Below are positions 9,714-32,810 of a stretch of 64,000 bases of DNA, one piece after another; positions within the stretch are counted from its first letter, which is position 1; each line of letters begins with the position of its first letter. Origin of the DNA: Haliotis rufescens (lineage: Eukaryota). A model generated the notes under the pieces. That model was given only the letters and a program-made list of their open reading frames with translations, was not told the origin of the DNA and did not search any database. The stretch lies in contig NW_025963957.1 in NCBI RefSeq assembly GCF_023055435.1, positions 2,790,001-2,854,000 of the forward strand. Direction: 5' to 3'. Position numbers and translations under genes: made by a program.

Positions 9714-9767
9714 ACTTTCCCTTTCGATTTCGCGTTCTGAGTATAGATTAAGAGAACCTTCCAGGAA
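9714..9767 (-). promoter_or_regulatory. ISRE/IRF-type triple GAAA element plus GAS-type site, paralog 1
   Basis: Minus strand GAAATCGAAAGGGAAAGT at 9731-9714 and TTCCAGGAA at 9759-9767, 167-220 nt upstream of the ATG. Confidence 0.65.
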
Positions 9768-10104
9768 ATTTAGAGGTTATGAAGACCCGACCAAAATCTT
9801 TTAAAGTCAGGATATAGCCCCCTTTGTATTTATTTGTATCTATTCCAACTACGCCTTGTTCATTCGACTTCTCTGTGGTCCAGGTGATAAAGCGTGTGCC
9901 CGGAGAGAGCGAGGTCGAGGGTCTACCAAAGGACGTTAAAAGATCGTACTGTTTGGTACCCAGACTGGCACTCGGAATCAAGTGGTTAAACCAAGTATTA
10001 TTCGGCTCGGAGTCAGTATACTGTGTATGAGTGGGGTCTTCATTAAGTTCATGTCAGTGGGATAGCACTATGAGATCCTCATTAGTCCGGACCAGTACAA
10101 GCAG

Positions 10105-10153
<49 letters not shown>
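10105..10153. repeat. (CA)n microsatellite
   Basis: Seen directly. Confidence 0.95.
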
Positions 10154-10156
<3 letters not shown>

Positions 10157-10822
10157 CCACACTCACGTGCATGTACTCCGCTGTGTAAGTCTAATGGACC
10201 ATGTTTTATGCAATTCATGTGCAGTTTGTGATTTTTCATAAACGTTTTCAGTTGCAGAGTGAAGAAAATCTTGACCATTCAGTGTTATGAGTCAGCCAAA
10301 ATTCCATGTGCATCAATTGTTTGAGAAACCTAACGTCACTCAATTCCAACGTTTATCAACTAAGACACATAAAGTGCCTTACTCTCCACACATGTTGGTA
10401 TACATGCCCATCACTCAACTGTTCTTGTGAGTTAAGTGTGTTCGAATCCCAGATTATCCCACATTAACACAAGACAAGTGAGTGAGTGTCTTGGCTTTAC
10501 ACTGCTTTCAGAAACATTCTACGTGGGCTATTCACATATCGAAAACAGGTCCCATGGCGTGAAGAATATACCACCAGGCTACCCAATCGCACTTCATCGA
10601 TAAAAAAACACCCATAAATGCATTGTAAACACCTTTATTAGTAACATCTTACCCCAAACAGGGACATATCTCTTTGGAAGATAAATTGAACCGATCAAAA
10701 AACATAACACTTTGCGACTCCTACGCGTAATATTTGGCAGATACACAAGAAGATATGGTCAGTTTATGGTCATAAACTTACATTTTTCACTTGTTTTCAT
10801 AAAAGAGTTCCTTCTGAGTATA

Positions 10823-11322
10823 ACCCCTGAAGGTCCGGGGTAGAATAGGTCTTCAGCAACCCGTGCTTGCCATAAAAGGTGACTATGCTTGTTGTAAGAG
10901 GCGACTAACAGAGTCGGGTGGCCAGGCTCCATTTCTTACGTTTTGTGGCCTGTAAGTCTAAGGTTAATTATATGTCGAATCCCCCTAGATATTTATGAAT
11001 ACCAAGTGAAACATGAATAACAACGTTCAAGACATGTTTTTAACAAACTTTTTTCCTTGTAGTCTGACTCGTGAAGACCCGGGGTAGAATAGGTCCTCAG
11101 CAACCCATTCTTGCCATAAAGGCGACTTGTCGTAAGAGGCGACTAACGGGGTCGGGTGGTCAGGCTCGCTGACTTGGTTGATGCCTGTCATCGTATCCCA
11201 ATTGCGTGGACCGATGCTCATGATATCAATCACTGGATATTCTGGTCCAGACTCGATTATTTACAAACCGACTTACATAGCTGATATATTGCTGAGTGCG
11301 ACGTTAAACAACAAACAACAAA
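10823..11322 (+). mobile_element. Composite family B insertion (partial head, spacer, full copy at 11065-11322)
   Basis: Two family B heads. 10955-11305 closely matches 26903-27262. Confidence 0.75.
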
Positions 11323-12061
11323 CACACCTCCTGAGTGTACACCTATCCCAGACGTGAAGTGCTTGTGGAAGAAATATACTTGACAACAACATAGAAGTAC
11401 GTATATACAAGGAAGTTTTAGCTGTTGTTGTCAAGCGACTTCACCGGTAATCCGCCAACAAAGAGGGCATGCTGTAGTATGCTGTTGATTTGGGTAGCTG
11501 TGGTAAAACCTCTTTGATTGAGGTTCATGTATAATACAGGCAATAAACTGCCAAGTGTTAATAAAACACAGCGACATATTACTTCATGTCCGATGAATAG
11601 ATACCAATACGTTTAAAGTCATTCGTTGTTTGTTAACATTTAGAAACTATTGTTACCCGTCTGCTGCTATTACTAAGCGTGTTACAGCTGCTACCAGCAT
11701 CTCTATACAGCCTGACCAAGCGATCCATGTAGTCGCCTCGTACTTGTAGGTTCTTCCTGGACCTATCGGGTTAGGCCGACCTATCCTACATTACATTAGA
11801 ATTGAATAAATGCGAATAAATAAACTGGAGTACACGGTGTTTGTACATACAGAAAGAGTGCATAGTTTGTTTCACGGTACGCGAAGCGTGAATAACGTAA
11901 CGTGTAAGCAATTGCGGCTCTGCCTTTTACACTGCCAACAAGGATATATTAATAGACCTGTTCTGGCGCCTTTAAACAAATATTGAACAAGATATCGCCG
12001 TAAGTGTACCATCCCCGTCTGTTTTGCAGTGCTAATGAACCGCTATGGATGTAATGGACCA

Positions 12062-12343
12062 GAGTGAGTGAGTGAGTTGGGTTTAACGCCGCTTTTAACA
12101 GTATTCCAGTTATATCGCGGCGTGTCAGCTTAATGTGGGAGGAAAGCCCGAAGTGATGCAGGTCTCAGACGTTTGCAACTTCGGTGAAACCCACGAGCAC
12201 GGGTATGGTGCTGACAAACCTAGAAACATAATCGGGGCGAACCGGGATTCGAACCCACAATCATAGGTTTCTGGTGTGCCCAAGGGACGCAACTCTGCAC
12301 AGCGAATCGCGGCGCCTTAGACGACTGGGCCACCCGTGCCCCC
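12062..12343 (-). mobile_element. tRNA-derived SINE, family C (Leu/Ser-like head with long A-B spacing)
   Basis: Head GGTGGCCCAGTCGTCTAAGGCG ... GGTTCGAATCC and (ACTC)n tail; TSD TAATGGACCAG. Confidence 0.85.
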
Positions 12344-31900: not shown

Positions 31901-32040
31901 TTGCTTTCTGTGTAATCTGTAGGTGGGGATTAAGTTAAGATCATCAGACAAATAAATGTGTGGCCAAGTGCACGATACAATTCTATCATGAAGTGCCTCC
32001 ACGTTAATCAAACCACACCCTCCTATTGCAACTGGTAAAT

Positions 32041-32073
<33 letters not shown>

Positions 32074-32425
32074 CAGTAGTAGAAAGGTTATTGTTTAAAT
32101 CTCAAAATATTCTCTGTGTTTAGCTCAAGGACAAGAGATGATTTCAAAATGTGTGAGGGAAACTCAGAGTCACCCTCGTGCAGGTGGATAAAGTACGAGC
32201 TATTATAACCCCTGAATGTTCCGGGTTAGAATTGGTTTTCAGCAATTGCCTACGTATAGTAAGATACGACTAAATGGATCGGGTGATCAGGCTCGGCAAC
32301 TACCTTTCAGCATACATTGACGACGTGGGTCGTTGCTCGCAGTATCAATCACTGGATGATCAGATTCGATAAGTAATGGGCTGCAGTCATATACCTAGAA
32401 TATTGATGAGTGCGGCGACACACAC

Positions 32426-32458
<33 letters not shown>

Positions 32459-32564
32459 TCACACGCCACACACACACACTCACACGCCACACACACACAC
32501 CACACACAGAAACACGTTTTGTATCTCTACCTTTCTCATCATTTATGCTTCCTCCTTCAGCCAT
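25902..32564 (-). CDS. PHYHIP C-terminal-domain protein, paralog 4 (two exons, ~245 aa)
   Basis: Exon 1 32564-32531 (MAEGGSINDEK+G, AAG|GTAGAG). Exon 2 26605-25902 (TTGCAG|AATATCTG), phase 1. The 5.9 kb intron contains a 39-bp minisatellite. Confidence 0.85.
27015..27262 (+). mobile_element. SINE-like family B
   Basis: Full head and body. Confidence 0.82.
27563..31630. repeat. 39-bp minisatellite, ~100 copies, in the paralog 4 intron
   Basis: Unit GACAGCTGGACAACATCTAACCAAGCAAGGCATGTTAAT with recurring variant blocks. Confidence 0.95.
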
Positions 32565-32756
32565 TACGCAGTCTCAACCTACTTCCTTTTCTAGTTCCTT
32601 CTTCATACGGTGACTGGACTAGTAATGTTTGTTATTCGTATACGTTGGCACTATTATTATCCCAATACACTCGTGTGCAAACATGTCTGTATTGCCGTAT
32701 CCAACTGTTAACTGCTCGTCAACAACCTTGACATTTTCGTGGATCCTAGAAATGTT

Positions 32757-32810
32757 ACTTTCGCTTTCGATTTCGCATTCTAGGAATGGAGTAAAATAAC
32801 TTTCCTGGAA
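32757..32810 (-). promoter_or_regulatory. ISRE/IRF-type triple GAAA element plus two GAS-type sites, paralog 4
   Basis: GAAATCGAAAGCGAAAGT at 32774-32757, TTCTAGGAA at 32778-32786 and TTCCTGGAA at 32802-32810. Confidence 0.68.

What the first reader, a model, noticed from the sequence alone, without database searches (positions are those of the whole stretch)
9714..32810. Conserved ISRE + GAS promoter module suggests an interferon-like inducible gene family
Seen: paralogs 1, 2 and 4 have GAAA-TC-GAAA-G(G/C)-GAAA-GT 153-210 nt upstream of the ATG. The only core substitution is in a spacer position, while nearby flanks differ. Paralog 3 has a different GAAA array at a similar distance (21101-21129). 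TTCNNNGAA sites adjoin in paralogs 1, 3 and 4 (two in paralog 4). Known: GAAANNGAAA is the IRF/ISRE consensus, TTCNNNGAA is the STAT site, and molluscs have IRF and STAT factors. Inference: the array is an IRF/STAT-inducible, possibly antiviral module. GAS 9-mers alone are common by chance; the triple GAAA at a fixed position is the stronger signal.
Basis: partly seen in the sequence, partly recalled or inferred. Interest (0 to 1): 0.85.

Follow-up and report, generated by a model that had tools for sequence, protein, structure and literature searches.

The report
Conserved IRF-type promoter site, abalone genes
A short triple-GAAA DNA motif of the kind bound by interferon regulatory factors is the best-conserved part of the promoters of a tandem family of small red-abalone genes, which makes them good but still untested candidates for infection-induced genes.

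Summary
The window is red abalone (Haliotis rufescens) DNA. It carries a minus-strand tandem array of two-exon genes that encode PHYHIP_C-only proteins of about 230 aa.

- **Genome-wide count.** The 18-mer GAAATCGAAAGSGAAAGT lies 153-210 nt upstream of the ATG of paralogs 1, 2 and 4. It occurs only 5 times in the 1.33-Gb genome. The other two copies also lie upstream, in sense, of PHYHIP_C genes on two other contigs. A sixth, slightly degenerate copy sits just left of the window.
- **Conservation.** Across the six promoters it is the most conserved 18-nt window: mean pairwise identity 0.94-0.96 against a median of 0.61, and 0 of 20,000 permutations match it. Exon-2 synonymous sites between several of these genes are saturated.
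- **Paralog 3.** Its array is a diverged homologue of the same element, not a different array.
- **GAS.** The GAS site 27 nt upstream is perfect in only 3 of 6 copies.
- **Factors.** The genome has two IRF genes with an intact recognition helix and one STAT.

The most likely reading is a selected IRF-type cis-element. Infection-inducibility remains a hypothesis.

The scan noted the same theme earlier on another PHYHIP gene of this genome (s1-813617).

The parts
9714..9731 (-). Paralog 1 triple-GAAA (ISRE/IRF-E-like) 18-mer. The conserved block extends to about 9697-9741.
   Evidence: Exact match. It is the most conserved window of the six-promoter alignment.
9759..9767 (-). Paralog 1 palindromic GAS-type site TTCCTGGAA, 27 nt upstream of the 18-mer.
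   Evidence: 6 such sites in the window against 0.65 expected.
9514..9547 (-). Paralog 1 exon 1 (MAAGWSMTDDR plus the first base of a split codon).
   Evidence: (P0004).
6362..7008 (-). Paralog 1 exon 2, PHYHIP_C domain.
   Evidence: Pfam PF19281, E 8e-33. Acceptor and stop.
16427..16444 (-). Paralog 2 triple-GAAA 18-mer.
16472..16480 (-). Paralog 2 degenerate GAS position (TATCATGAA).
16242..16274 (-). Paralog 2 exon 1, visible part. Its last base and the splice donor are hidden in the N gap 16004-16241.
   Evidence: (P0005).
14770..15434 (-). Paralog 2 exon 2, PHYHIP_C domain.
21101..21129 (-). Paralog 3 diverged GAAA array. It is homologous to the 18-mer and contains GAAAATGAAAGT.
21092..21100 (-). 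Paralog 3 GAS-type site TTCAAGGAA, abutting the array.
20921..20954 (-). Paralog 3 exon 1. NCBI's model P0016 starts at an upstream in-frame ATG at 20990.
19855..20660 (-). Paralog 3 exon 2, PHYHIP_C domain plus an acidic tail.
32757..32774 (-). Paralog 4 triple-GAAA 18-mer (C at the spacer position).
32802..32810 (-). Paralog 4 GAS-type site TTCCAGGAA, 27 nt upstream of the 18-mer.
32778..32786 (-). Paralog 4 second GAS-type site TTCCTAGAA, abutting the 18-mer. It is present in this copy only.
32531..32564 (-). Paralog 4 exon 1 (MAEGGSINDEK).
   Evidence: (P0001, 100% identical).
25902..26605 (-). Paralog 4 exon 2, PHYHIP_C domain.
3087..3121 (-). Relic paralog-3-type GAAA array. About 170 nt downstream lies a pseudo exon 1 (2914-2947) with an in-frame TGA.
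   Evidence: The array and exon 1 are the only parts that align with paralog 3's promoter.
54164..54197 (-). Exon 1 of a paralog-4-like copy ('paralog 7'). Its core promoter has been lost: the equivalent of 32582-32852, which holds GAS, 18-mer and TATA-like element.

Best explanation
**What it is.** The triple-GAAA 18-mer and its immediate flanks form a block of about 45 nt. I read this block as a functional IRF-type binding element (ISRE/IRF-E/PRDI-like) in the proximal promoter of a clade of small two-exon PHYHIP_C-only genes of red abalone.

**How it most likely works.** One or both of the abalone IRFs bind the tandem GAAA cores, which are 6 nt apart, and drive transcription. An ancestral palindromic GAS-type site sits 27 nt upstream. 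In the copies that keep it, STAT may contribute.

**What is shown**
- The element exists and is specific to this family.
- It is far more conserved than its flanks and than synonymous sites.
- It matches IRF site architecture.
- The factors are encoded in the genome.

**What is inferred**
- IRF is the binding factor.
- The transcription start lies about 120-135 nt downstream. This rests on a conserved TATAC box followed 28 nt later by a CAGTCA initiator-like motif.
- IRF activation by infection or dsRNA induces the genes.
For: **Specificity**
- Only 5 exact copies exist in 1.33 Gb. All five lie upstream, in sense, of PHYHIP_C exons, on contigs C179, C112 and C445.
- A sixth copy, with two changes, lies upstream of the neighbouring gene p0.

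**Constraint**
- It is the most conserved 18-nt window of the six-promoter alignment: 0.94-0.96 against a median of 0.61, and higher than the 0.82 around the ATG.
- Only 2 of 18 columns vary, against 67% overall; 0 of 20,000 permutations reach this.
- Flank identity is 0.59-0.82. Block identity is 0.80-0.98.
- Exon-2 dS between p1/p2/p4 and p0/p3/C112 exceeds 1.7.

**Independent footprints**
- Between paralog 3 and the relic at 3087-3121, the only promoter segment that aligns is the GAAA array.
- A distant PHYHIP gene at C445:25.25 Mb has two GAS sites next to an antisense GAAAGTGAAAGT-type site. A near-identical site lies about 9 kb upstream of the PHYHIP_C exon at C445:18.58 Mb.

**Factors**
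- Two IRF genes carry the WKxxxRCALN recognition helix. One STAT DNA-binding exon is present.
- Oyster IRFs activate ISRE and IFN-beta reporters (PMC5557890).

**Other**
- No Rfam family overlaps the block.
Against: - There are no expression, transcription-start or binding data.
- No paper or held supplement links PHYHIP-like genes to mollusc immune responses.
- Generic triple-GAAA patterns are not enriched genome-wide over the reversed control: 91 against 77.
- The GAS site is intact in only 3 of the 6 type-A promoters.
- Paralogs 5-7 and most other family members lack the element.
- Distant homologues on metagenomic contigs show no upstream enrichment: 5 sense against 13 antisense in 82.7 kb.
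- Promoter and exon-2 histories disagree. For example, p1 and p4 have dS 0.15 but promoter flanks only 65% identical, while p1 and C112 have saturated dS but flanks 75% identical. Recombination or gene conversion has therefore occurred, and divergence times read from exon 2 are uncertain.
- NCBI's paralog 3 model starts its CDS upstream of my predicted start region.
Confidence: 0.55

Rival explanations
1. The element is a real IRF site but sets constitutive or tissue-specific expression, as an IRF1/IRF2-type basal site does. It does not mediate infection- or cytokine-induced expression.
For: The sequence evidence is the same as for the main reading. Nothing in the sequence tells basal from induced use. 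The GAS partner is dispensable in half of the copies.
Against: In oysters the IRFs are themselves induced by poly(I:C) and virus (PMC5557890, PMC8218723). The family is tandemly expanded and evolves fairly fast, with dN/dS about 0.5 among recent copies. That pattern is more typical of defence genes.
Confidence: 0.2
2. The block is bound by another factor that reads GAAAG-type repeats, for example a PRDM1/Blimp-1-like zinc-finger repressor. PRDM1 competes with IRFs at PRDI-type sites in vertebrates (from my own knowledge).
For: The invariant stretch runs beyond the GAAA cores into GTAACAG and TTCTAGGA. This is more than a minimal IRF site needs.
Against: Three evenly spaced GAAA cores with a GAAAGT end are the IRF signature. 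The one variable position within the cores' span is a spacer base (G/C/A), as expected for IRF contacts. I ran no search for a PRDM1 homologue.
Confidence: 0.1
3. There is no function. The identity reflects recent duplication or gene conversion among paralogous promoters.
For: Promoter and exon-2 trees disagree, so sequence exchange has happened. All copies descend from one ancestral promoter.
Against: Conversion homogenises contiguous tracts. Here a 20-45-nt island is near-identical in all 15 pairwise comparisons while both flanks are 59-82% identical. The island sits at the same place in copies on three contigs. The paralog-3 type keeps only this island.
Confidence: 0.08
4. The block is transcribed and acts at the RNA level as a 5'UTR element.
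For: The transcription start is unknown. NCBI's paralog 3 model extends further 5' than the shared ATG.
Against: A stretch of variable length and poor conservation separates the block from the conserved TATAC/CAGTCA region. There is no Rfam match. In other family members the motif occurs in the opposite orientation, which fits a DNA site.
Confidence: 0.07

Closest known systems
Vertebrate ISRE / IRF-E / PRDI-type elements (for example GAAANNGAAAGT; the IRF1 motif of tandem GAAAGT hexamers)
   Same: - Direct GAAA cores separated by 2 nt.
- A GAAAGT 3' end.
- A promoter-proximal position.
- The sequence variation falls in a spacer base.
- The genome encodes IRFs with the conserved recognition helix.
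   Different: - The host is a mollusc without a canonical interferon.
- The spacers are TC and GG/GC rather than GT.
- Binding and inducibility are untested.
- The target genes have no vertebrate ISG counterpart.
Composite GAS + ISRE promoters of vertebrate interferon-stimulated genes (for example IRF1- and GBP-type promoters; from my own knowledge)
   Same: A palindromic TTCCNGGAA sits at a fixed 27 nt upstream of the IRF-type site in p0, p1 and p4. Another family member has two GAS sites next to an antisense IRF-type site.
   Different: The GAS site is degenerate in p2, C112 and C445_44.92. It is therefore not under the same constraint as the IRF-type site.
Invertebrate IRF targets described so far: oyster IRFs acting on ISRE reporters and the CgIFNLP axis (PMC5557890, PMC8218723), and shrimp IRF acting on Vago (PMC4602278)
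   Same: The logic is the same: an IRF acts through ISRE-like DNA in a protostome.
   Different: Those studies used reporters or single cytokine-like genes. Here a native, multi-copy, evolutionarily footprinted site lies in front of an expanded effector-like family.

Membership tests
ISRE / IRF-E type cis-element | Two or more GAAA cores in direct repeat, 2 nt apart (AANNGAAA units) | tested here: met
   Three cores are present in p1, p2, p4, C112 and C445_44.92. Two cores plus CAAA are present in p0. Two to three are present in p3.
ISRE / IRF-E type cis-element | 3' flank of the last core is (G/C)(T/C), as in GAAAGT | tested here: met
   GAAAGT is invariant in all type-A copies and in p3.
ISRE / IRF-E type cis-element | Position in the proximal promoter, within a few hundred nt upstream of the transcription start | tested here: inconclusive
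   The element lies 153-210 nt upstream of the ATG. The transcription start is only predicted, from a conserved TATAC and a CAGTCA motif. No reads were available.
ISRE / IRF-E type cis-element | Evolutionary constraint on the cores relative to the flanks | tested here: met
   (0 of 20,000 permutations). dS is saturated between several carriers.
ISRE / IRF-E type cis-element | A cognate IRF with an intact DNA-recognition helix is encoded in the same genome | tested here: met
   Two IRF genes carry the WKxxxRCALN helix.
ISRE / IRF-E type cis-element | Bound by IRF, and required for induction by virus, dsRNA or cytokine | not testable with these tools
   This needs EMSA or DAP-seq, reporter assays and challenge RNA-seq.
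GAS (STAT) site | Palindrome TTCNNNGAA (optimal form TTCCNGGAA) | tested here: inconclusive
   Perfect in p0, p1, p4 and, at another position, in p3. There are 1-2 mismatches at the homologous position in p2, C112 and C445_44.92.
GAS (STAT) site | A STAT is encoded in the genome | tested here: met
   One STAT_bind exon at C334:6.956 Mb.
Interferon-stimulated gene (functional class) | Transcript induced by an interferon-like signal or by viral challenge | not tested
   No reads were available. The literature and supplement searches were blank.

The most novel reading that the evidence does not exclude
PHYHIP_C-only proteins are a lophotrochozoan family of IRF/STAT-induced effectors with an ADP-ribosyltransferase fold. 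They would play a role like that of the interferon-induced PARPs of vertebrates. The composite GAS + ISRE promoter architecture would then have been in use for defence genes outside vertebrates, independently of a canonical interferon.
Probability: 0.2. Interest if true: 0.8.

Novelty: new member of a known kind. Interest (0 to 1): 0.55.

Why it matters
Native IRF target sites in molluscs are almost unknown. Work so far rests mostly on mammalian reporters driven by oyster IRFs.

This locus offers three things:
- A footprinted native site.
- A built-in set of natural controls in one genome: carriers, non-carriers and one promoter-deleted copy.
- An unexplored effector-like gene family whose predicted fold resembles ADP-ribosyltransferases.

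If induction is confirmed, the locus would give abalone immunology a marker gene set and a defined response element. It would also inform how IRF/STAT-driven defence programmes looked before interferons.

Tried and rejected
- **Cross-species footprinting.** No other tool gives Haliotis DNA from other species.
- **Literature.** No paper in the library joins PHYHIP-like genes with molluscs or immunity.
  - The one hit in the HaHV-1 abalone study is in the table annotating all unigenes, not a list of differentially expressed genes.
  - The oyster poly(I:C) hit is a different gene, a phytanoyl dioxygenase-domain protein.
  - The mussel and H. discus hannai sets gave nothing.
- **Genome-wide generic triple-GAAA search.** It showed no global enrichment. 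It did reveal other clustered copies, for example nine on C2 at 23.5-23.9 Mb.
- **ART family coordinates.** Pfam ART (PF01129) genes do not coincide with those clusters.
- **One-mismatch copies elsewhere (L006-L012).** They have no recognisable genes next to them.
- **Distant homologues on metagenome contigs.** No ISRE enrichment.
- **Heat-shock element, NF-kB, NFAT and ETS-IRF composite readings.** I rejected these by inspection. The GAA spacing is 6 nt in direct repeat, and the GGAA core is lost in the C-spacer copies.
- **Paralog 5.** I could not find its exon 1.
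Full report
[quoted passage not shown] The window is contig C179:2790001-2854000 of a 1.33-Gb genome.

Seven stretches in the window match PHYHIP_C exons by tblastn. All are on the minus strand. Pfam PF19281 confirms the five that I scanned.

The four paralogs of the finding correspond to NCBI proteins P0004, P0005, P0016 and P0001. Each gene has a 34-nt first exon (MAEGGS...-type), a phase-1 intron and one large exon that encodes the whole domain:

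| Paralog | Exon 1 | Exon 2 |
|---|---|---|
| 1 | 9514-9547 | 6362-7008 |
| 2 | 16242-16274 | 14770-15434 |
| 3 | 20921-20954 | 19855-20660 |
| 4 | 32531-32564 | 25902-26605 |

Paralog 4's 5.9-kb intron holds a 39-nt minisatellite of about 104 copies.

**Gaps.** The N gap at 16004-16241 begins directly after the visible 33 bases of paralog 2's exon 1. It hides the last exon base, the splice donor and the start of the intron. The motif is 185 nt away on the other side. NCBI's P0005 joins the two visible exons. I could not test continuity with reads. The gap at 23107-23236 is intergenic. A genome locus fetched for another purpose showed letters inside the first gap when printed. I did not use them, and I cut paralog 2 at 16242 afterwards.

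**The observation.** The 18-mer is exact at 9714-9731, 16427-16444 and 32757-32774 on the minus (sense) strand, with none expected by shuffling. GAAANNGAAAGT occurs four times in the window against 0.23 expected. There is one copy in each of the four promoters, all in sense.

**Beyond the window.**
- In the whole genome the exact 18-mer occurs five times.
- The two copies outside the window lie at C112:68134767 and C445:44917635. A family search finds PHYHIP_C exons just downstream of both, on the same strand.
- Each is followed after about 150-170 nt by a recognisable MA.GG-type first exon.
- A sixth copy, with CAAA for the first core and A at the spacer, lies upstream of the neighbouring gene p0, about 1.9 kb left of the window.
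- A position-weight scan finds no degenerate copy upstream of the other family members.

**Is it more than shared descent?**
- In an alignment of the six promoters, the most conserved 18-nt windows are those over the motif. Mean pairwise identity there is 0.94-0.96, against a median of 0.61 and 0.82 around the ATG.
- Only 2 of the 18 columns vary, against 67% of all columns. No permutation out of 20,000 gives such a window.
- The near-invariant core runs from the first GAAA to GTAACAG. The one variable base between the cores is a spacer base (G, C or A).
- Outside a 45-nt block the pairwise identity is 0.59-0.82. Inside it is 0.80-0.98.
- Exon-2 synonymous divergence between p1/p2/p4 and p0, p3 or C112 is saturated, with dS above 1.7.
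- Promoter and exon-2 relationships disagree. Some recombination or gene conversion has therefore occurred, and I do not read ages from exon 2. Conversion, however, does not explain a short island flanked on both sides by diverged sequence in every pair.

**Further footprints.**
- Paralog 3's array aligns to the same place and keeps the hexamer register and the GAAAGT end.
- A relic at window 3087-3121 carries a paralog-3-type array about 170 nt upstream of a dead first exon. That array and the exon are the only parts that align with paralog 3's promoter.
I located COPB1 at C445:25.237 Mb. Upstream of the PHYHIP exon at C445:25.255 Mb I read two TTCCAGGAA sites followed by an antisense GAAAGT-repeat site.
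- A near-identical antisense site with a GAS site beside it lies about 9 kb upstream of the PHYHIP_C exon at C445:18.58 Mb, in flanks that otherwise do not align.
- Composite GAS + GAAA-repeat clusters number 8 in the family's upstream regions against 2 in the reversed-sequence control.

**A natural deletion.** The unit at about 52.6-55.1 kb copies paralog 4's intron, exon 1 and far-upstream region. It lacks the equivalent of 32582-32852, which holds the GAS site, the 18-mer and the TATA-like region.

**Trans factors.** The genome has two IRF genes (C595 and C79), each with the DNA-binding domain split over two exons. Both carry the recognition-helix motif WKxxxRCALN. It also has one STAT DNA-binding exon. 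Oyster IRFs activate human ISRE and IFN-beta reporters and are induced by poly(I:C) (PMC5557890, PMC8218723).

**Core promoter (inference).** A conserved GTATAC is followed 28 nt later by a conserved CAGTCA. This suggests a start about 50 nt upstream of the ATG. The 18-mer would then lie at about -117 to -134 in paralog 1. NCBI's paralog 3 model starts its CDS further upstream, so this is uncertain.

**What argues for caution.**
- I obtained no expression, start-site or binding data.
- The literature is silent on these genes in molluscs.
- The generic triple-GAAA pattern is not enriched genome-wide: 91 against 77.
- The GAS site is intact in only half of the homologous promoters.
- Several paralogs lack the module.
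- Distant homologues on metagenome contigs show no upstream enrichment, although those contigs are short.

**The proteins.**
- An AlphaFold model of P0001 is confident (pLDDT 93.5).
- Foldseek finds nothing significant. There is no sequence match to any solved structure.
- In the search that does not rely on Foldseek, essentially all 36 chains with Z of 2 or more are ADP-ribosyltransferase-fold or closely related NAD-utilising proteins: DarT, KptA/Tpt1, PARPs, diphtheria-toxin-like proteins and Rhs ART toxins. The best Z is 4.1.
- These scores are individually weak. The uniformity of the hits is what is notable.
- R38, S93 and E182 are conserved in 52, 53 and 48 of 54 homologues.
- This agrees with notes s1-810526 and s1-808109. 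It remains a lead only.

**Verdict.** It is best read as a selected IRF-type cis-element, with an ancestral but less constrained GAS partner, in front of a clade of small PHYHIP_C genes. Infection-inducibility and an antiviral role are plausible and directly testable, but they have not been shown.

Noticed in passing
window 25902-26605 and the other PHYHIP_C exons; model m283c62bfb1fe: The predicted structure of the PHYHIP_C-only protein (pLDDT 93.5) gives only weak structural matches (Z 2-4.1). Essentially all 36 are ADP-ribosyltransferase-fold or related NAD-utilising proteins. R38, S93 and E182 are conserved in the family.
   Followed up: partly
window 27563-31620 (and a partial copy at 52611-53178): A 39-nt minisatellite of about 104 copies, 86% matching, fills most of paralog 4's intron. 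A shorter copy lies in the paralog-7 unit.
   Followed up: no
window 17682-18356: A 25-nt tandem repeat of 27 copies, 97% matching, lies in the intergenic DNA upstream of paralog 2's promoter.
   Followed up: no
window 54164-54222 against 32582-32852: A paralog-4-like unit keeps exon 1 but has lost 271 nt that hold GAS, 18-mer and TATA-like element. This is a natural promoter deletion that could serve as a control.
   Followed up: partly
window 2914-3121 and 24482-24513: Two relics were seen. One is a paralog-3-type GAAA array with a dead first exon (in-frame TGA). The other is an exon-1-like fragment without an ATG, between paralogs 3 and 4.
   Followed up: partly
window 36492-36500 and 40269-40277: Paralogs 5 and 6 lack the GAAA element. 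They share a TTCCTGGAACGTT-type GAS-like site 1.1-1.2 kb upstream of their large exon. Two further TTCCTGGAA sites (36742, 52381) sit in a shared repeat.
   Followed up: partly
G000 C2:23520252-23873458; C1:77833162-77853337; C24:19387504 and 19417383: Other clusters of identical triple-GAAA 18-mers recur at gene-like spacing, which suggests further tandem families with IRF-type promoters.
   Followed up: partly
L054-L133 (metagenome contigs): 169 of the 473 pattern-matched stretches in JGI and other metagenomes encode PHYHIP_C-only homologues. The 80 kept are 31-46% identical, and most matches begin at query residues 6-18, next to the 11-residue first exon of the abalone genes. They probably come from host animal DNA.
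   Followed up: no
window 98-169: A tRNA-like match just above the Rfam threshold lies on the minus strand, probably in a tRNA-derived repeat.
   Followed up: no
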